Virus record (IMG/VR): IMGVR_UViG_3300027834_000005
Location: 62,001-126,000 of that record
DNA: 64,000 nt
Reading direction: 5' to 3' (one strand)
How positions within the stretch are numbered: position 1 is the stretch's first letter; the number at the start of each line of letters is the position of its first letter. The notes beneath the pieces were generated by a model that was not told the DNA's origin, did not search any database, and worked only from the letters and a program-made list of their open reading frames with translations. Positions 5,851 to 56,830 of this stretch are shown here, piece by piece. A program made the position numbers and the translations under genes.

Positions 5851-6234
5851 ATGAATTTAAAACTTATCGAGACTGATAACGAGTTATACCATATTGATGC
5901 CACTGGTAAAATTCAAGGTGAATACCGCAGAAGATACCGTAGTGGCGCTCGTCAAGTGAGAAGCTTCTACGTAGATGATAAAGCGGAAGGAATGTTTCGT
6001 AGTTGGCATGAAAATGGCACGCCTTGTGTCAATTGCATGATGAAAAACAATGCACCGCATGGTGAATATTTGATGCTGCACGATTGTGGATCAGTCAACG
6101 AACACACCATCCACATTGATGGCGTTACGATAGTGACTCCAGAACACATAGACGTTACAGACATGTCAGAGACAGACATGTTTGAATTGAAACTTTTATA
6201 TGGAGACATAGGTTTCCTTCGTGACAATAAATGA
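5851..6234 (+). CDS. Tag-array protein, MORN-variant class
   Basis: EGMFRSWHENG; SETDMFELKLLYG. Confidence 0.85.
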   Translation: MNLKLIETDNELYHIDATGKIQGEYRRRYRSGARQVRSFYVDDKAEGMFRSWHENGTPCVNCMMKNNAPHGEYLMLHDCGSVNEHTIHIDGVTIVTPEHIDVTDMSETDMFELKLLYGDIGFLRDNK

Positions 6235-8974: not shown

Positions 8975-9311
8975 CCTAATAGGACCTAGACCTAGAGGCG
9001 AATTTACTATCACATTAGATAGTTCTGAACACCTACGTTTTATACCAGATCTATCTAAGCATATGGTGGTCCATAACTTTACTGAGTGTCCCTACACACG
9101 TAATGATGGTAGTCCTATGTATCGTATGTATTATACCACAGAATATAGCGGATGGTACTTGTTGTACGTCTACTTTAAGGACGGTAATATAATGGTGTCG
9201 TACCCTCAAGAAAGAATCTATATGTACACGGTGGACTTATTGACCGACGAGGATAGAATGTACCATACCATATCGGGCACATCACCTGATTTTTTCTTAT
9301 TTAGGAAATAG
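8967..9311 (+). CDS. Tag-array protein, LDGxLP class
   Basis: LTDEDRMYHTISGTSP. Confidence 0.75.
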   Translation: MFDLIGPRPRGEFTITLDSSEHLRFIPDLSKHMVVHNFTECPYTRNDGSPMYRMYYTTEYSGWYLLYVYFKDGNIMVSYPQERIYMYTVDLLTDEDRMYHTISGTSPDFFLFRK

Positions 9312-9312
9312 A

Positions 9313-9606
9313 ATGTACTATACACTAGAAGACATACCCATCGGCACATACGTTTGTAGTCTTAGAGGGGACGGAACTATAATAGAGGCATTCGTCAAAC
9401 TAAAAGAAGATTGGGTATATGACTTCGAGACAGAGTGCGACGATACTTATGGTCTTCTGTATAAGAGACCTCCGTATATACTTCTGGAAAACTTAGTAGA
9501 CGCTGAACTAATATTTCATGCCAAACTAACAGGGGATCACACCGAACTCCGAGAAGCGACTATGCAGTTGAAATGGGACAATTCATTTGGCGAAATAGAT
9601 GACTAA
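9313..9606 (+). CDS. Tag-array protein, LSGDW class
   Basis: AELIFHAKLTGD; paralog of 11033..11380 (YDFET). Confidence 0.8.
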   Translation: MYYTLEDIPIGTYVCSLRGDGTIIEAFVKLKEDWVYDFETECDDTYGLLYKRPPYILLENLVDAELIFHAKLTGDHTELREATMQLKWDNSFGEIDD

Positions 9607-9685
9607 GTCGTATTAAAATGTTACTCTTTCATTTCCAAATGACACGAATGTGTGCTATAATCCTACGAATACAAAGGTCAATACC

Positions 9686-10096
9686 ATGAAACATAATAAT
9701 CATTTGCCGAAAGATATCCAGATAGCAAGCCGTGACGTCGAAGTTGGAAAGACATACATCATGATCGGTGTGAATGAGTCGGTGGCTGAATATATAGTAG
9801 TTACTAAGATAACTGACTTTGAAGTCCCTATGTTCGGGGGAGTAACCGACACAATAAGCTACGTTGATCTAACCAACGATAGGCTATATACGTGCGATAT
9901 TAATATATTCATAGACCACTTTAAGGATGCATACGTCACTACATTAGACAGTATTAAGTCCACGTTGGACGGGGAATACTTATTCCAAATGGCTTTAACC
10001 AGTAACGACGTTAACCTAGTTAGACTGTGGGTCGAAGATCATAATCTCATCCACACATACTGTGACGACCTTAGTGGACGAGGAAAGGCATCATGA
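9686..10096 (+). CDS. Tag-array protein, LSGDW class (divergent)
   Basis: DGEYLFQMALTSND. Confidence 0.75.
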   Translation: MKHNNHLPKDIQIASRDVEVGKTYIMIGVNESVAEYIVVTKITDFEVPMFGGVTDTISYVDLTNDRLYTCDINIFIDHFKDAYVTTLDSIKSTLDGEYLFQMALTSNDVNLVRLWVEDHNLIHTYCDDLSGRGKAS

Positions 10097-10671
10097 GTCT
10101 CACGGAGTACAGAGATGACACATGTGTTTACTACACCGATGAATACGGTAGATACCAAGGTGAATACATATCATGGTACGGAACTGGCACTGTGTATCAA
10201 ACTCTCACATACGTTGATGATTTAGTTCACGGTGACATTATCACATGGCATCCGAACGGCAAGGTTAAATCTGTGAGGTCCTATGACATGGGCATAGTCA
10301 ACGGGGATTTTGCCTATTGGTGTGAATTTGGTACAATCGAATCATCGAAGTCTTATTCTGACGGTAAGTTACATGGTCTTTATCGTAGATGGTGGAGTAA
10401 CGGTCACCCACGATCTGAAACATTAATGGTTAACGATGACGCTCAAGGCGAATACAAAGAATGGCACTGTACCGGCGTTTTGAAATCTAGAACGTCATAT
10501 GTTAATGATCACATGCATGGCGAACTTATAAATTATTCTACTGACGGCACCGTATCAGGTAATTCATACATGGTAAACGATGTAGAGTTAATAGACTTAC
10601 TTCAGACCAACGTCACGGAGGAAGATAAGTTTGCATTAACACTGATTCACGGAGGTAAATGGCTGTCATGA
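10093..10671 (+). CDS. Tag-array protein, MORN-variant class
   Basis: Multiple HGxYxxWxxNG repeats; VTEEDKFALTLIHGG. Confidence 0.85.
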   Translation: MSLTEYRDDTCVYYTDEYGRYQGEYISWYGTGTVYQTLTYVDDLVHGDIITWHPNGKVKSVRSYDMGIVNGDFAYWCEFGTIESSKSYSDGKLHGLYRRWWSNGHPRSETLMVNDDAQGEYKEWHCTGVLKSRTSYVNDHMHGELINYSTDGTVSGNSYMVNDVELIDLLQTNVTEEDKFALTLIHGGKWLS

Positions 10672-22834: not shown

Positions 22835-22980
22835 AATACGAATCATTCTCATTTGCGCCTGTAAACCGTAATGCGAATCATTCTCATTCTCATCTATAAC
22901 TATCAGGCAGGAGTGGTGTTTATCTCCTCGGTTATCCCAAGCCATGTAAGTATTATACCTATCCTCACGTAGAGTGCAAG
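22835..22980 (-). ncRNA. Non-coding cassette A (promoter, ACACCACTCCTG core, 2 Fur-like boxes)
   Basis: -10 at 22952-22957(-); core 22908-22919; Fur-like boxes 22835-22853 and 22870-22888. Confidence 0.55.
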
Positions 22981-23004
22981 CATTTATTTGATATAATTTC
23001 AGAT

Positions 23005-23023
23005 AGTAATGATAATGATTATC
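23005..23023. promoter_or_regulatory. Fur box
   Basis: AGTAATGATAATGATTATC, 16/19 match to GATAATGATAATCATTATC. Confidence 0.55.
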
Positions 23024-23252
23024 CCTTAGTCTCTGCGATTACTCTAGTGTCGATATTATGCATAATATCGTGAGCGGTGGCAAGGGATATATACACTATT
23101 ACATGAGTACTTGTCCCCATAGTAGTTTTTATATAAGGAGATGATTCTGTATCTTTGGGTATTACCAGAATATTATTCTCATCATGCATACTGCCCGTCA
23201 TAGGTTTGTTGCTGTATACGCGCTCTGTTGATGATTCGTGTAATAGTTTCAT
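23019..23252 (-). CDS. Hypothetical early protein
   Basis: RBS AAGGAG; own promoter (duplicated at 23676-23730). Confidence 0.7.
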   Translation of the reverse strand: MKLLHESSTERVYSNKPMTGSMHDENNILVIPKDTESSPYIKTTMGTSTHVIVYISLATAHDIMHNIDTRVIAETKG

Positions 23253-49189: not shown

Positions 49190-49283
49190 AACGCGAATCA
49201 TTCGCATTCGCATTCTCATTACCCAAATAGCAGGCAGGAGTGGTGTAGCTCTATTATACTAGCATTCACAACAACAACACAAG
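49190..49283 (-). ncRNA. Non-coding cassette C
   Basis: TTGTGT..TATAAT(-); core starts at predicted +1 (49246); Fur-like hexamers 49190-49220. Confidence 0.55.
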
Positions 49284-49481
49284 CTTTATTTCATCTAATT
49301 AAATATAAAATGAATGAATAAAAAGCTTTACATATACAGCCAGTTCTATAATATAGGTGGCACTTGTTTAGAACAACAAACAAAAAGAAAGACAAATAAA
49401 AGCTTGCAATACTCTTTCACTTGTCTATAATGAGAATCATCAAAACAAAAAAACAAAAACTTTTATATAACGGGCTTACTT

Positions 49482-50147: not shown

Positions 50148-50251
50148 ATACGAATGATTCTCAATTGCAAATGATTATCATTCTCATTACCCAAATACCA
50201 TGCAGGAGTGGTGTAAGGTCATTATACTACCAACCACAACAACAACACAAG
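50148..50251 (-). ncRNA. Non-coding cassette D
   Basis: -10 at 50221-50226(-); core 50203-50214; Fur box 50170-50188; runs into the bidirectional terminator. Confidence 0.6.
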
Positions 50252-52857: not shown

Positions 52858-52943
52858 TAGTTGACATACTCAGTCAGTTCTATATAATTGTTAACAAGTC
52901 GGGGGCATACAGCAACCGACACAAATCAAAAACGGGATTTATC

Positions 52944-53198
52944 ATGGCTTCATACAAACTTTCTACTATTGCCGCTATCTACGCACTACAACAAGCCATC
53001 GTTGCCGATAAAGCACCTTGCACCCTAACGCAACATTACTTTGCCAAGCAAGTGGTACAGATTGCCGAGCAAGTAGATAACGAGTTTATCATTGATACGC
53101 CTTTAGAGGAAGTCAAAGCAAGCGTTCAATGCGCGTATGATTTTGCTAAGGTTGTGGCGGATAGTGGCGGCCTTGTATACACTCAGGCGAGTGTATAA
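52944..53198 (+). CDS. Small hypothetical protein
   Basis: Family-2 leader. Confidence 0.65.
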   Translation: MASYKLSTIAAIYALQQAIVADKAPCTLTQHYFAKQVVQIAEQVDNEFIIDTPLEEVKASVQCAYDFAKVVADSGGLVYTQASV

Positions 53199-53269
53199 CT
53201 ATGGCTATCACGTTATCAGTTATCATGGTTCTTTCTTTTCCTTTAGTCTTTAGCCTGTAGGGGTTTATT

Positions 53270-53614
53270 ATGCTATTAGTCATTAATGCACTAGAACAAG
53301 TCAAAAGCGGCACTGATGGCGCGGCCACTATAATCTCTCATATTAACGCGCACCCACTCAAAGCGCTTATTGCTGAAGGGCTTTATGAAAAGGTACGGGA
53401 ACGCGATAACATAGCAGATAAACGCTATTCATTACAGGCACGCCGTAAAAAGGCCGACAAGTACACAAACACCGACGCTATGGATAAAGACATAGAAGCG
53501 TTAGGGTTGCAAGAAGATGCCCTAGATGGCGATATAGAGGCCATAGTGCATGAATCTAAGAAAATGCTAAACTTTGAAATTGCATTGATTGTAAACGAAT
53601 TCTCAAAATATTAA
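53270..53614 (+). CDS. Hypothetical coiled-coil protein
   Basis: 114-aa ORF. Confidence 0.65.
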   Translation: MLLVINALEQVKSGTDGAATIISHINAHPLKALIAEGLYEKVRERDNIADKRYSLQARRKKADKYTNTDAMDKDIEALGLQEDALDGDIEAIVHESKKMLNFEIALIVNEFSKY

Positions 53615-53632
53615 ATAAGCCTTTGGGGGGAC

Positions 53633-53711
53633 TTGTGTCCCCTCTTTTTTTGTGTATAATAGAACCACACCACTCCTGCCTGCTATTCCACTAATGAGAA
53701 TGATTATCATT
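53633..53711 (+). ncRNA. Non-coding cassette F
   Basis: TTGTGT-N16-TATAAT; core 53667-53678 at predicted +1; Fur box AATGAGAATGATTATCATT at 53693-53711. Confidence 0.6.
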
Positions 53712-53716
53712 CACAC

Positions 53717-53732
53717 TGTTCCACGTGAAACA
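53717..53732. promoter_or_regulatory. parS site
   Basis: TGTTCCACGTGAAACA fits TGTTNCACGTGAAACA. Confidence 0.8.
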
Positions 53733-53756
53733 TAAACTAACACGCAATCAACTCTA

Positions 53757-53878
53757 AATGAGAATGATTCCCAACAACTGATAGCAGACAGGAGTAGTGT
53801 TTGCCTCCTAGCTCCGCAGCTAGCCCCAATCCCTTATCTCTTAATACCTATTATAATGATCTGAATACATAACGCAAG
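53757..53878 (-). ncRNA. Non-coding cassette G (converges on F)
   Basis: -10 at 53850-53855(-); core 53789-53800; partial Fur-like box at 53757. Confidence 0.55.
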
Positions 53879-54116
53879 CATTATTTCACCTAAATTAAAT
53901 ACAAAATTAGATGATTATATAGTTGACACTAACAGCAGAATGATTAATAATAGCTTCACTGTTTAGGCAAGCCCTAACAGCGCTAAAACAGATATGAAAT
54001 TATCTGAAAATAAAACAAGTAATCGCTTGACTCTATAATCACTAAGCGATACTATATAACAACTGAAACCAATAACGAGTTTCGGACAAAGCCCCAAAGG
54101 GGCAAAGGCTATTATT

Positions 54117-55172
54117 ATGAATACTTCTACTCCTTCAAACGTTGTTTCTCTTTTCTCTAAAACTTCTGCCGCTGTAGCTGTTACTACTGCCGCCGTGGAC
54201 TATGCGCCTGTACGTCAAGAGGCACGCGAGAACGGTCTGTCTACGCCTAACTGGAACGTTCCTACATGTAAGCGTGAAGATATCGGCCTAACGTTACATG
54301 CTCAGCTAGACGCTAAAGGCGTGTTCTATACTGTTGATGGCCGTGATAACTTCGTACAGAATAATGCGGGTGAATTTGTAAGCACTGGCTCGAAAACTAT
54401 CTACAATGAAACGAATGAAAAAACTCTTGGCGTTATGTCTAAAGGTTATGAGATTGTCCAGAATGAAAACATCTTCACTTCTCTTTTTGCAGAGATTGAA
54501 CGTGCTGGCCTAGACGTCTCTAATGCCTTCACACGCGTTAGAATGGATAACGACGGTCAAAGAGTAATGGCGGAAATCATCTTTCCAGAAACATCGTTCG
54601 ACGTCGCTGTAGGTGATACCGTCGCCTTGTCTATCACTGCAATCAATAGCTTTGATGGTAGTGGCGCTTTTCACCTTAAAATGGGCGCGTTTCGTTTCAT
54701 CTGTGCTAACGGTATGGTATCAGCTAACGGTATCATTGAGTATAAGCACCAACACAGCAAAGGCTTAAGCGCTTCAAGTGCTGCTAAGCATATCGCTAAC
54801 GGCATGACTCAATATAATGAAGACAAAGAGTCTTTATTAGAACAAGCCAACACACAAGTAAACGCGCAAGATGTTTATGAAGCGTTAGCAATCATGAACA
54901 AAATTGATACTAAACTAGCGCCAACCTATGAGCAATACCAGCTTGTTATTCGCCCAACACTTAAACGTGAGCCAGCTATAGAGCGTCATATGGGCTTATG
55001 GAATAAGTACAAGGCAGAGCTAGGCAATACCCAATGGGCACTTAACAACGTGCTAACGCATATCAGCACACATGGCGACAAGCCAGAGTATACAGCAGAT
55101 CAAAACATTACTACCCGCTCAGGCAAAGAGAAGTTAGTAGGTGTTGCACTACGTAACATGTTAGCGGCATAA
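54117..55172 (+). CDS. DUF932/DUF945-family protein
   Basis: LGVMSKGYEIVQNE, NSFDGS, GAFRFICANG, TQWALNNVLTH. Confidence 0.8.
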   Translation: MNTSTPSNVVSLFSKTSAAVAVTTAAVDYAPVRQEARENGLSTPNWNVPTCKREDIGLTLHAQLDAKGVFYTVDGRDNFVQNNAGEFVSTGSKTIYNETNEKTLGVMSKGYEIVQNENIFTSLFAEIERAGLDVSNAFTRVRMDNDGQRVMAEIIFPETSFDVAVGDTVALSITAINSFDGSGAFHLKMGAFRFICANGMVSANGIIEYKHQHSKGLSASSAAKHIANGMTQYNEDKESLLEQANTQVNAQDVYEALAIMNKIDTKLAPTYEQYQLVIRPTLKREPAIERHMGLWNKYKAELGNTQWALNNVLTHISTHGDKPEYTADQNITTRSGKEKLVGVALRNMLAA

Positions 55173-55234
55173 GCCCTAACACCTAACACGATAAGGCTGG
55201 CATTGTCCAGCCTTTTTTACGTCTATTGTAATAG

Positions 55235-55554
55235 TTATCCACACCCTGTGCATAACCTGTTAGTAATACTTATCCCCTACCTTATCCACAATCCTATAGT
55301 TATCCACAACCACTGCGCTATTATAGTGCACGACCATGCACCATAGGGGGGCACCCCCCTACCCCTGCCCCTATGCACACGGGTGGCGGCATGTCAAGGG
55401 ATAACTTATGCACAATTGTACACAGAGTTACACACAATATAGCGGTTTTAGCGAAAGTCAAGGGATAACTAGCACTATTTCTGTGCATAAGCCTGTGGAT
55501 AAGAAAAAATAGTTATCACCAGGGGTCCTGTGTATATGTATAACCTGTGGATAA
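55235..55554. promoter_or_regulatory. Cluster of DnaA boxes
   Basis: TTATCCACA at 55235, 55282, 55300, 55494(-), 55546(-); TTATGCACA at 55247(-), 55406, 55482(-); further 1-mismatch boxes. Confidence 0.85.
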
Positions 55555-55652
55555 CTTAGGGGCGACCTAGCCAGCGGCCCAATTTTTTTGCCCCCAGACC
55601 CCCCCCATGGTAAAAATTTTTCCCAGAAAATTTTCCGACCCTCCTACCCCCC

Positions 55653-55725
55653 AACCCTCGGTAAACCCTTGGTGAACCCTTGGTAAACCCTTGGGCGACG
55701 TAGTCGCTACCCTCGGTAAACCTTG
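55653..55725. repeat. 11-bp direct repeats (island right boundary)
   Basis: aaccctcggta aacccttggtg aacccttggta aacccttgggc, preceded by C-runs and A/T tracts. Confidence 0.7.
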
Positions 55726-56387
55726 TACATGATCCTGTGCTTATGTTCTATCCACTCACACAACTCTTCTGCCGACACATTAGGGGGTGGGAGTGACCAC
55801 GCTTTCCGTGTTCCTGACGTCGCAGCCCCAAAGGGCAGCTCTGTTAGTGGTGGGGCAAGCGTTCCGACTCCTCGACTCGACACTCCTAGCGGCACTTTAG
55901 TGGATACTTTAGTGGATACTTTAGTGGATACTTTAGTGGATACACTAGAGGAAAAGTCACCACTATGATTAGTTATGGTGGGAATGTAGGGTGCATAGTA
56001 GAACCCACTGTCAGAATCACGTTGGGGGATATACTTCCGATCCATGTAGACCCCCAGATATAGCCCTGTGAAGGCCCTGACGCGATCTTTTGGATCATAG
56101 AGTATATCGGTTAGGATTTCATCCTCTTCGCCTCCTAGCTCGTGCTGGAACTGTGTGGGGCCATCTACTATCCCTGTGACGGAACTATAGAAGTCACCCA
56201 CAACAGAACCCCATAAATTTACTTGTATGTCTATGTCGTGGAGTTTAGATGTATTGAGGAAATGATAGAACATGTCTCCGGCAGCATTTCTAAAGCATAT
56301 GTGACGGTTGTAGTAGACTTTATGCAGTTCCATGCCTATTGAATGAATCATGTTTTTTGATCGCATCATGTTTTTTGATTGCATCAT
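55707..56387 (-). CDS. Hypothetical protein with repeat expansions
   Basis: STKV x4 (12-bp repeat 55894-55941); DSGFYYAPYIP motif. Confidence 0.55.
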   Translation of the reverse strand: MMQSKNMMRSKNMIHSIGMELHKVYYNRHICFRNAAGDMFYHFLNTSKLHDIDIQVNLWGSVVGDFYSSVTGIVDGPTQFQHELGGEEDEILTDILYDPKDRVRAFTGLYLGVYMDRKYIPQRDSDSGFYYAPYIPTITNHSGDFSSSVSTKVSTKVSTKVSTKVPLGVSSRGVGTLAPPLTELPFGAATSGTRKAWSLPPPNVSAEELCEWIEHKHRIMYKVYRG

Positions 56388-56830
56388 GTTTTTATGTTCT
56401 CGCGTAATAGTCTTTCCACTGTTCGAGTGTCTACTAGCGCACCGTATACTGCGATGCAGGATGGTGGCATACTGCATGCAGTGGCGTAGTTTCTAGTGTC
56501 TTCGTATTTATGAAGGAAGTGGTAGAATGCCACTCCCTGTCTTTCACTCTTGAGTTCATCGAATTCATAATCGTCAAATGCGTCCAATCCTTCTCCGCTC
56601 AGTTCGTAGTTGAATTGATCTTCACGGCTAAACTCTACCATACGGACGGTATAAAATTCTTCGCCGATATTAATTCCGAAAGTAGAATTCTTTTTCTTCT
56701 TTTCGGAATGCATATAGGCAAGTGAGAATGAATGCGCATAGTGGATGAATTTTTCTCCATCCTGTCTTGCAATAGAAAAATGATTTCTATATCCAAATGG
56801 GTATACTTTATGAAATGAATAATTATGCAC
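56384..56830 (-). CDS. Tag-bearing protein
   Basis: SREDQFNYELSG. Confidence 0.7.
   Translation of the reverse strand: MHNYSFHKVYPFGYRNHFSIARQDGEKFIHYAHSFSLAYMHSEKKKKNSTFGINIGEEFYTVRMVEFSREDQFNYELSGEGLDAFDDYEFDELKSERQGVAFYHFLHKYEDTRNYATACSMPPSCIAVYGALVDTRTVERLLRENIKT

What the first reader, a model, noticed from the sequence alone, without database searches (positions are those of the whole stretch)
55235..55560. Dense DnaA-box cluster at the island boundary: origin, datA-like sink or injection-stop signal
Seen: 5 perfect TTATCCACA and 3 TTATGCACA plus degenerate boxes, in both orientations, around a G6-CA-C6 inverted repeat, where + and - transcription converge. Known: oriC, datA and DARS are DnaA-box clusters, and DnaA-binding sites were reported in the phage T5 injection-stop region. 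Large myophages normally replicate independently of DnaA. Inference: DnaA titration to block host initiation, a host-dependent early origin, or a two-step injection stop.
Basis: partly seen in the sequence, partly recalled or inferred. Interest (0 to 1): 0.72.

Follow-up and report, generated by a model that had tools for sequence, protein, structure and literature searches.

The report
Host DnaA-binding array in jumbo phage
An uncultured 347-kb marine jumbo phage carries, in one gene-free gap, a dense and conserved array of binding sites for the host replication initiator DnaA. It is laid out like the unexplained "injection-stop" region of phage T5 rather than like a replication origin, so it gives a second, unrelated system for working out what such arrays do.

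Summary
The 534-bp gap between convergent genes at 55173-55706 holds 8 consensus DnaA boxes (5 TTATCCACA, 3 TTATGCACA), or 13 boxes allowing one mismatch, within 320 bp. The whole 347-kb genome has only 24 consensus boxes. Three assemblies agree base for base, so this is not contamination.

At least four pairs are tandem "double boxes" 2-3 bp apart, the form DnaA binds in vivo. Two inverted arms, each with two double boxes, flank a very stable G6CAC6 centre.

The array is conserved in near relatives. A 71%-identity relative keeps only the right arm, and more distant relatives keep the neighbouring non-coding element without boxes. Eleven other large phages checked have no cluster.

There is no AT-rich unwinding element and no phage DnaA, Rep, ParB or integrase, so an origin is disfavoured.

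The geometry and setting (after a terminator, at a convergent junction, followed by direct repeats) match T5's iss core. The phage also encodes a T5 A1 homologue, and word depth in the source run drops about 1.8-fold within about 0.4 kb of the array.

Best reading, at low confidence (0.35): a DnaA-protein barrier or anchor of the T5 type, with DnaA titration as a consequence. The function is untested.

The parts
54117..55172 (+). DUF932 (PF06067) gene, the last gene of the + strand block of small genes. It is the conserved left-hand partner of the non-coding element in relatives.
   Evidence: Pfam E 4e-21. Homologues at 41-71% identity. Model pLDDT 74 with no PDB fold match.
55193..55224 (+). 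Intrinsic terminator of the + block: an 8-bp stem followed by a T run.
   Evidence: An equivalent hairpin plus T run follows the DUF932 gene in relatives.
55233..55310 (+). Left arm of the array. Boxes at 55235(+), 55247(-), 55270(+, TTATCCCCT), 55282(+) and 55300(+). 55270/55282 form a tandem double box with a 3-bp spacer.
   Evidence: Inverted-repeat pairs I1 and I2 with the right arm. This arm is missing from the 71%, 68% and 56% relatives.
55346..55359 (.). G6-CA-C6 inverted repeat at the centre of the array. It lies in the most thermally stable part of the genome.
   Evidence: The 60-bp window starting at 55331 is within the most stable 0.001% of the genome.
55371..55470 (+). Central boxes: CTATGCACA 55371, TTATGCACA 55406, TTGTACACA 55416 and TTACACACA 55428 (the last two form a tandem double box). 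Two copies of GTCAAGGGATAACT at 55393 and 55457 read as degenerate boxes (TTATCCCTT) on the - strand.
   Evidence: family D8; motif unique in the genome.
55482..55554 (-). Right arm, the conserved core. Tandem double box 55482/55494 (3-bp spacer) and double box 55535/55546 (2-bp spacer), about 53 bp apart, all on the - strand.
   Evidence: The same two (-) double boxes 53 bp apart occur in relative L234.
55555..55652 (.). Conserved junction element with A/T tracts and C runs: AATTTTTTTGCCCCCAGACCCCCCC and GGTAAAAATTTTTCCCAGAAAATTTTCCGACCC.
   Evidence: Alignable with L234, L231 and L235 downstream of their DUF932 genes (alignment A1). Five of the genome's ten C6 runs lie in the 55173-55706 gap.
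55653..55727 (+). 11-bp tandem repeat AACCCTTGGTA, 3.8 copies plus a fourth separated copy. It looks like an iteron and its sequence is specific to this lineage.
   Evidence: (family D1). L235 has a different tandem repeat at the same place. A variant in run X2 skips 55635-55757.
55707..56477 (-). Open reading frame of 256 aa with no known family. It is the first frame of the - block and contains a polymorphic 12-nt repeat (STKV units) at 55894-55943.
   Evidence: No homologue in the relatives' right flanks. One repeat unit fewer in the ENA assembly.

Best explanation
The gap is a docking array for host DnaA, built on the same plan as the core of the T5 injection-stop (iss) region.

**Proposed layout.** Two inverted arms each carry two "double" DnaA boxes (8 boxes), with five more boxes between them, around a very stable GC palindrome. 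The array follows a terminator and is followed by a conserved A/T-tract and C-run element and lineage-specific direct repeats.

**Proposed mechanism.** As soon as this DNA is in the cell, DnaA dimers and oligomers load on the double boxes. Together with the rigid centre they form a large protein-DNA plug at the right-hand end of the small-gene block. The plug acts as a barrier or anchor for anything that tracks along the DNA:
- DNA still entering the cell, if this phage has fixed ends like T5 and like its distant relative CBB;
- RNA polymerases arriving from either side, each of which meets TTATCCACA on its own sense strand.

As copies accumulate, the array also withdraws DnaA from the host.

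**Shown:** the boxes, their spacing, orientation, rarity and conservation; the lack of origin features; the A1 homologue; the depth step.

**Inferred:** DnaA binding, by sequence only; the barrier role; any link to DNA entry.
For: **DnaA binding is likely**
- 13 boxes in 320 bp against 1.2 per kb in the genome.
- Four tandem double boxes with 2-3 bp spacers, the arrangement DnaA needs in vivo (PMC11317965).
- No phage DnaA domain IV.

**The layout matches T5's iss core**
- The arms are inverted copies of each other (I1, I2). This mirrors T5's IRC-spacer-IRD and IRD'-spacer-IRC', each with two box pairs 3 bp apart (bioRxiv 10.1101/866236; T5 boxes at 9437/9449 and 9498/9510).
- T5's iss likewise lies after + strand genes and a terminator, and before a - strand gene.
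- The genome encodes a T5 A1 homologue: 41% identity over 465 aa, E 6e-106, phrog_1745.

**The array is under selection**
- A near relative in run X4 differs at 9 of 273 positions inside the array, against 8-11% in the flanking gene.
- The right-arm core is kept in a relative whose DUF932 protein is 71% identical.

**A physical landmark may lie here**
- Word depth in the source run is 66 and 60.5 to the left and 34.2 to the right of a break at 55.9 kb.
- The distant relative CBB has an annotated 22.5-kb terminal repeat made of small + strand genes.

**A barrier to transcription is plausible**
- No intrinsic terminator was found for the - block.
- DnaA-box complexes are known to block RNA polymerase (cited).
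Against: - The DnaA role in T5 injection stop is itself an untested hypothesis.
- There is no significant sequence similarity to the T5 iss beyond the double box itself.
- The A1 homologue is 117 kb from the array, and no A2 was found.
- Five non-T5 phages with A1 homologues have no DnaA cluster.
- The genome assembles as a 347,087-bp circle with arbitrary break points. Fixed ends or a terminal repeat are therefore not shown, and headful packaging would make an injection stop meaningless.
- The depth step could instead come from a co-occurring strain with a different right-hand block. Relatives do differ exactly there.
- Relatives at 68% and 56% DUF932 identity keep the junction element without boxes, so DnaA binding is dispensable for whatever that element does.
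Confidence: 0.35

Rival explanations
1. The array is a DnaA sink, working like datA by titration. Its selected function is to withdraw DnaA, or DnaA-ATP, from the host as the phage genome multiplies. This would block new rounds of host replication or re-tune the DnaA regulon. Under this reading the position at the junction is incidental.
For: - It has many consensus boxes and preferred double boxes.
- The phage has no DnaA of its own.
- Box number varies among relatives (13, 4, about 0), as expected for an accessory, dosage-type trait.
- Dense clusters also occur at odd places in other viral contigs, for example between capsid genes in L186.
Against: - A sink does not need the palindromic two-arm geometry, the fixed position after the terminator, or the stable centre.
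- No IHF consensus site was found, unlike datA.
- No experiment or computation here bears on titration.
Confidence: 0.25
2. The region is a DnaA-assisted replication origin. DnaA on the two opposed arrays, plus an unknown phage protein on the 11-bp repeats, would open nearby DNA and load the phage DnaB-like helicase. This would resemble iteron plasmids, P1 oriR or oriC.
For: - Two opposed box arrays resemble the left and right halves of oriC.
- Adjacent 11-bp tandem repeats and phased A/T tracts are unique in the genome and conserved in position among relatives.
- The phage has a DnaB-like helicase.
- A depth step at an origin is expected for unidirectional replication.
Against: - There is no unwinding element: the least stable 30-bp window is only in the top 5.6% of the genome.
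- The centre is among the most stable DNA in the genome, and the right-hand module is 55% GC in a 40% GC genome.
- There is one GATC and no IHF site.
- No Rep_3, ParB or integrase gene was found.
- The neighbouring genes are a DUF932 gene and an unknown frame, both pointing into the site, so transcription converges rather than diverges.
- Relatives keep the element without boxes.
Confidence: 0.2
3. The boxes are bound mainly by a phage protein, or the region is only a recombination linker between mosaic modules, and the likeness to DnaA boxes has no functional meaning for DnaA.
For: - The junction is a mosaic boundary: right-hand genes are unrelated among relatives, and variants diverge just after 55557-55634.
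- The A1 homologue carries an extra N-terminal helix-turn-helix domain of unknown target.
Against: - Five exact copies of the 9-mer that is the highest-affinity DnaA site, plus preferred double-box spacing, are hard to get without selection for DnaA.
- No DnaA-like DNA-binding domain is encoded in the genome.
Confidence: 0.1

Closest known systems
Injection-stop (iss) region of phage T5 and other Demerecviridae (Repeat Region 3, IRD'-spacer-IRC', and its inverted partner IRC-spacer-IRD)
   Same: - An untranslated region after a terminator and before an opposing gene.
- About 8 DnaA boxes in pairs with 3-bp spacers, two pairs per arm, with arms in inverted orientation.
- Followed by direct repeats and A/T tracts.
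- The phage encodes an A1-family protein.
   Different: - The arms are about 200 bp apart here, against about 3.2 kb in T5, and there are five extra central boxes and a G6CAC6 core.
- No sequence homology beyond the boxes.
- A1 is 117 kb away and no A2 was found.
- A terminal repeat and two-step entry are not shown.
- The host is marine, and the virus is a 347-kb myovirus unrelated to T5.
DnaA-oligomerisation region of oriC (E. coli type)
   Same: A dense array of high- and low-affinity boxes with 2-3 bp spacing, in two oppositely oriented halves.
   Different: - Orientation is inward rather than outward.
- No AT-rich 13-mer unwinding element, no GATC cluster and no IHF site.
- Not next to replication genes.
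datA (DnaA-inactivating and titrating locus) and DARS
   Same: A non-origin cluster of DnaA boxes that acts through DnaA binding.
   Different: datA needs an IHF site and has about 5 boxes over 1 kb, and no IHF consensus was found here. The DARS core arrangement was not tested.
Iteron-type origins with accessory DnaA boxes (P1 oriR, pSC101, RK2 oriV)
   Same: DnaA boxes lie next to short tandem direct repeats, and the number of boxes varies among relatives.
   Different: No Rep gene, no AT-rich segment, and the repeats abut the 3' end of an unrelated frame.
DnaA-box roadblock at the asnC terminator (Schaefer and Messer 1988, 1989)
   Same: DnaA bound downstream of a gene stops RNA polymerase. 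Here each incoming polymerase would meet the boxes in the same relative orientation.
   Different: That case has one box, while this has 13. Which orientation is active could not be checked because the paper is not held.

Membership tests
T5-type injection-stop region | DnaA boxes in pairs 3 bp apart, two pairs per arm, with arms as inverted repeats (about 8 boxes) | tested here: met
   Pairs at 55235/55247, 55270/55282, 55482/55494 and 55535/55546, with arms paired as I1 and I2. The T5 description is and the T5 boxes.
T5-type injection-stop region | Lies at the inner end of a long direct terminal repeat that enters the cell first | tested here: inconclusive
   The genome assembles as a circle. 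Word depth steps 1.8-1.9-fold near the array, but a strain mixture could explain that.
T5-type injection-stop region | A1 and A2 genes upstream in the first-entering segment | tested here: not met
   An A1 homologue is present at record positions 234372-236351, 117 kb from the array. No A2 hit at E<0.1.
T5-type injection-stop region | Sequence homology to the T5 iss | tested here: not met
   The best local alignment is the 22-nt double box, scoring 29 against 22.6±2.6 in shuffles. For the flanks, 15 of 300 shuffles reach the observed score.
T5-type injection-stop region | Two-step DNA transfer observed | not testable with these tools
   The phage is uncultured and known only from a metagenome.
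DnaA-dependent origin (oriC type) | Cluster of DnaA boxes | tested here: met
DnaA-dependent origin (oriC type) | Adjacent AT-rich DNA unwinding element | tested here: not met
   Nearest-neighbour stability profile. The gap is 47.8% GC in a 40% GC genome.
DnaA-dependent origin (oriC type) | GATC and IHF sites, as in gammaproteobacterial origins | tested here: not met
   One GATC and no IHF consensus site.
DnaA-dependent origin (oriC type) | Supports autonomous replication | not testable with these tools
   Needs cloning.
Iteron-type origin | Tandem iterons with a cognate initiator gene next to them | tested here: inconclusive
   The 11-bp repeat in 3.8 copies is present. No Rep_3 was found, and the neighbours are a DUF932 gene and an unknown frame.
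datA-like DnaA sink | DnaA boxes plus an essential IHF site, with titration or hydrolysis of DnaA-ATP | tested here: inconclusive
   Boxes are present but no IHF consensus was found. Activity is not testable here.

The most novel reading that the evidence does not exclude
The array marks the inner boundary of a long terminal repeat and is a true T5-type stop signal in a jumbo myovirus unrelated to T5. Host DnaA would seize the entering DNA at the double boxes. The small-gene block would be expressed first, and the A1-family protein, here fused to an extra helix-turn-helix domain, would release the block. Two-step DNA delivery with DnaA as the stop factor would then be a convergent or widely spread strategy, not a peculiarity of Demerecviridae.
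Probability: 0.12. Interest if true: 0.85.

Novelty: new variant of a known kind. Interest (0 to 1): 0.64.

Why it matters
DnaA-box arrays in virulent phages are known essentially only from T5-like phages, and what they do there has been open since 1987.

This is a second, unrelated lineage: a 347-kb marine myovirus related at about 50% tail-sheath identity to PA5oct. It has the same double-box, inverted-arm design, under visible selection, and with natural variants carrying 13, 4 or about 0 boxes.

That makes the question testable in three ways:
- by comparison across the natural variants;
- by simple binding, titration and read-mapping experiments;
- by surveying other viral contigs, since the scan of viral contigs shows that many more of them carry dense DnaA-box clusters, which may point to a general way in which phages exploit the host initiator.

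Tried and rejected
**Contamination or mis-assembly: rejected.** Three assemblies carry the region with the same flanks.

**Searches that found nothing**
- Nucleotide searches of the phage collection.
- The two neighbouring proteins in viral contigs.
- The iteron sequence in viral contigs.
- Phage-encoded DnaA: no domain IV, and only a weak AAA+ hit to a 427-aa ATPase.
- Plasmid-like or lysogenic maintenance: no ParB, integrase or Rep_3.
- Rfam: nothing credible.

**Checks for the cluster in other phages: none has one**
- Five distant jumbo contigs, PA5oct, and four Rak2/CBB-group phages.
- Five non-T5 phages with A1 homologues. A1 also does not lie near any of 80 other viral DnaA-box loci.
- The terminal-repeat boundary of CBB has no similar element.

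**Homology to the T5 iss:** not significant.

**DUF932 fold:** the model is acceptable (pLDDT 74), but there is no PDB match by sequence or Foldseek.

**Fur-box reading of the dispersed repeats:** not enriched genome-wide.

**The contig break at 55.9 kb as a terminal-repeat edge:** the break itself is explained by a polymorphic 12-nt tandem repeat. Only the depth difference remains unexplained.

**Search for a second-strain variant of a right-flank protein:** none found. This neither proves nor excludes a strain mixture.

**Could not obtain:**
- The 1989 paper on the orientation dependence of DnaA roadblocks is not held.
- The 410-kb parent contig could not be searched as a record.

Full report
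**Observation**

The stated motifs are all present at the stated places. There are five TTATCCACA (55235+, 55282+, 55300+, 55494-, 55546-), three TTATGCACA (55247-, 55406+, 55482-), and GGGGGGCACCCCCC at 55346-55359.

The window is positions 62001-126000 of a 347,232-bp viral record at 40% GC. That record holds only 8 TTATCCACA and 24 TTATNCACA in total. So 8 of 24 fall in 320 bp, where about 0.02 are expected.

Allowing one mismatch gives 13 boxes in 320 bp against 1.2 per kb genome-wide. The next-best window has 5.

**What the genome is**

It is an uncultured marine jumbo myovirus. Its portal, sheath, large terminase, DnaB-like helicase and other genes are recognisable. The nearest named relative is Pseudomonas phage PA5oct at 51% tail-sheath identity, followed by Atu_ph07 and the Rak2/CBB group.

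Three assemblies carry the gap with both flanks and have different break points:

| Assembly | Length (bp) |
|---|---|
| JGI 3300027834 (the record itself) | 347,232 |
| JGI 3300002225 | 410,284 (wraps round by 63 kb) |
| ENA ERZ27237540 | 347,153 |

The JGI 410-kb contig is 100% identical to the record over 11 kb around the gap. The ENA contig differs from it over 6 kb only by one 12-bp repeat unit at 55894-55905. Both match the record exactly at its end.

The record's end overlaps its positions 20-145, and the coordinate offsets give a circle of 347,087 bp. The array is therefore not host contamination or a chimera.

The phage has no DnaA DNA-binding domain, and no ParB, integrase or Rep_3.

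**Setting**

The array fills most of the 534-bp gap between two genes:
- 54117-55172(+), a DUF932 protein and the last gene of a roughly 117-kb run of small + strand genes. It ends in an intrinsic terminator at 55193-55214.
- 55707-56477(-), the first frame of a roughly 29-kb - strand block that holds tail-fibre-like genes and a 3999-aa frame.

It is one of a few strand switches in the genome. No terminator was predicted for the - strand side.

**Anatomy**

Orientation runs + - + + + + + + + on the left and centre (55235-55428; this list adds TTATCCCCT at 55270, which has two mismatches and is outside the 13), then five - boxes on the right (55482-55546).

Four pairs are tandem "double boxes" with 2-3 bp spacers:

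| Pair | Strand |
|---|---|
| 55270/55282 | + |
| 55416/55428 | + |
| 55482/55494 | - |
| 55535/55546 | - |

A fifth pair, 55235/55247, is convergent with a 3-bp spacer.

ChIP-seq work in E. coli shows that DnaA in vivo binds almost only such double boxes 2 or 3 bp apart (PMC11317965). DnaA binding here is therefore very likely, though it is inferred from sequence alone.

The outer and inner parts of the left arm are inverted copies of those of the right arm (I1: 55233-55254 with 55535-55556; I2: 55269-55290 with 55482-55503).

Between the arms lies the G6CAC6 palindrome, in the most stable 0.001% of 60-bp windows of the genome.

To the right follow two further elements:
- an element of A/T tracts and C runs at 55555-55652;
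- an 11-bp tandem repeat (AACCCTTGGTA, 3.8 copies) at 55653-55694, with a further copy at 55708-55727.

All these motifs occur nowhere else in the genome.

**Relatives**

Near relatives (about 85-95% identical) in three marine-sediment runs carry the array. One contig differs at 9 of 273 positions inside it (96.7% identity), whereas contigs over the DUF932 gene differ at 8-11%. This points to purifying selection on non-coding DNA.

Homologues of the DUF932 protein led to four contigs with the downstream DNA (alignment A1):

| Relative (DUF932 identity) | What lies downstream |
|---|---|
| L234 (71%) | Only the right arm: two (-) double boxes 53 bp apart, as in the window, followed by the same A/T-tract and C-run element |
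| L231 (68%) and L235 (56%) | The element is kept (ATAGGGGTTGTT; AATTTTTTTGCCGCCAGACCCCC in L235, a looser AATTTTTTTGGACGAAAACCC in L231; GTAAAAATTTTTTCCAG in L235 only). L235 also has its own different tandem repeat. The box positions are degenerate. |

So the left 260 bp of the array is a recent expansion. The right arm is older. The junction element is older still and does not depend on DnaA boxes.

The genes to the right are unrelated among these phages, which makes this a mosaic boundary.

No cluster exists in any of the following:
- five distant jumbo contigs;
- PA5oct;
- CBB, BF, XbC2 and Muenster.

**Is it an origin?**

The two opposed arrays and the neighbouring repeats look origin-like, but a defining part is missing:
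- The least stable 30-bp window of the gap is only in the top 5.6% of the genome.
- The gap is 47.8% GC, and its right module 55%, in a 40% GC genome.
- There is one GATC and no IHF consensus.
- No initiator gene is nearby, and transcription converges on the site.

I rate an origin as possible but not the best reading.

**The T5 comparison**

Davison's analysis of 25 T5-like phages describes about eight DnaA boxes. They always occur in pairs 3 bp apart, two pairs in each of two inverted repeats, in the untranslated iss region (bioRxiv 10.1101/866236). A 2026 paper still treats the mechanism as unknown.

In the T5 record the iss (9140-10149) follows + strand genes and a terminator and precedes a - strand gene. 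Its pairs lie at 9437/9449 and 9498/9510, with the inverted partner at 6121-6194. That is the same plan as here, except that the arms here are about 200 bp apart rather than about 3 kb.

The jumbo phage also encodes a clear T5 A1 homologue at record positions 234372-236351. It shows 41% identity over 465 aa (E 6e-106, phrog_1745) and has an extra N-terminal helix-turn-helix domain.

Several points count against membership:
- There is no sequence homology beyond the double box.
- No A2 was found.
- A1 lies 117 kb away.
- A1 homologues occur in 1134 phage records. Five of them from non-T5 lineages were checked and have no cluster.

**Depth step**

Word depths of the source run's Logan contigs:

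| Contig span (window coordinates) | Word depth |
|---|---|
| About 39.85-48.73 kb (placed by its flanking letters) | 66.2 |
| 52,894-55,923 | 60.5 |
| 55,914 onward, about 49 kb | 34.2 |

This is a 1.8-1.9-fold step within about 0.4 kb of the array.

The contig break itself is explained by a polymorphic 12-nt tandem repeat at 55894-55943, which has one unit fewer in the ENA assembly. The depth difference is not explained by that. Three readings remain open:
- the edge of a long terminal repeat, which the distant relative CBB has (22,456 bp of small + strand genes);
- a step at a unidirectional origin;
- a second strain that shares the left block but has a different right block. No close variant of a right-flank protein was found, but replacement by unrelated genes is what the relatives show.

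I could not lay reads a second time, so this stays open.

**Conclusion**

The array is real, selected, and almost certainly a DnaA-binding structure. It lacks a defining part of an origin. It matches the T5 iss core in design and setting, but not in sequence or gene neighbourhood.

I commit, at 0.35, to a DnaA-protein barrier or anchor of the T5 type at the end of the small-gene block, with DnaA titration as an automatic consequence. The rivals are titration as the main function (0.25), an origin (0.2), and a role not involving DnaA (0.1).

**Wider note**

Ten of the 80 fetched have 6-10 boxes within 400 bp, and one of these lies between capsid genes. Dense DnaA-box arrays in phage DNA may be commoner than the literature suggests. 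A full-text search found no paper mentioning both DnaA boxes and jumbo phages.

Noticed in passing
Record positions 234372-236351 (L018:8372-10351:+), outside the window: A 659-aa homologue of T5 A1, the "DNA transfer protein" (41% identity, E 6e-106, phrog_1745), with an extra N-terminal helix-turn-helix domain (CENP-B_N/HTH_23) that T5 A1 lacks. A1-family proteins occur in 1134 phage records, including podoviruses and other jumbo phages.
   Followed up: partly
Window 39.8-58.9 kb, from Logan contigs of the source run: Word depth is 66.2 and 60.5 to the left and 34.2 to the right of a contig break at about 55.9 kb, a 1.8-1.9-fold step next to the array. It could be a terminal-repeat edge, a replication step or a strain mixture, and it is unresolved.
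   Followed up: partly
Window 55894-55943: A perfect 12-nt tandem repeat (4.2 copies, encoding STKV units) lies inside the 256-aa - strand frame. The ENA assembly has one unit fewer, so the sample holds at least two alleles, and this is what breaks the Logan contigs.
   Followed up: yes
Window 22840-23024, 41410, 49195-49290, 50153-50186, 53693-53775: Dispersed intergenic repeats of about 80-140 bp in the small-gene block. Their core (TGAGAATGATTATCA) is one mismatch from the Fur-box 7-1-7 consensus. The direct repeats of the T5 iss carry the near-identical TGAGAATCATTATCA. Genome-wide, Fur-like sites are not enriched over shuffles (7 against 4).
   Followed up: partly
Whole record; record ends: The record is a circle of 347,087 bp cut inside the family-B DNA polymerase gene. 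Its last 126 bp repeat positions 20-145, and the first 19 bp do not fit. A 410,284-bp JGI contig of the same phage wraps round the circle by 63 kb.
   Followed up: yes
L186:2737-2854 (IMGVR_UViG_3300045988_068554, 44 kb); also L138, L168, L166, L159, L165: Other viral contigs carry 6-10 consensus DnaA boxes within 400 bp. In L186 the cluster sits between a minor capsid protein gene and a scaffold gene. None of the 80 loci has an A1 or other T5 pre-early homologue nearby.
   Followed up: partly
Window 53615-54116: A 500-bp gene-free stretch upstream of the DUF932 gene, with a G6-containing terminator, inverted repeats and promoter-like TTGACA sites. Together with the gene and the array it forms a 2-kb module (53.6-55.6 kb) that has several-fold higher depth than its flanks in three sediment metagenomes.
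   Followed up: no
Record positions 335-347 kb and 218.8-220.5 kb (outside the window): The phage encodes a ClpB-like AAA+ chaperone, a DnaJ-like protein, a collagen-repeat protein of 1263 aa, a Kelch/peptidase M14 protein and a nicotinamide phosphoribosyltransferase.
   Followed up: no
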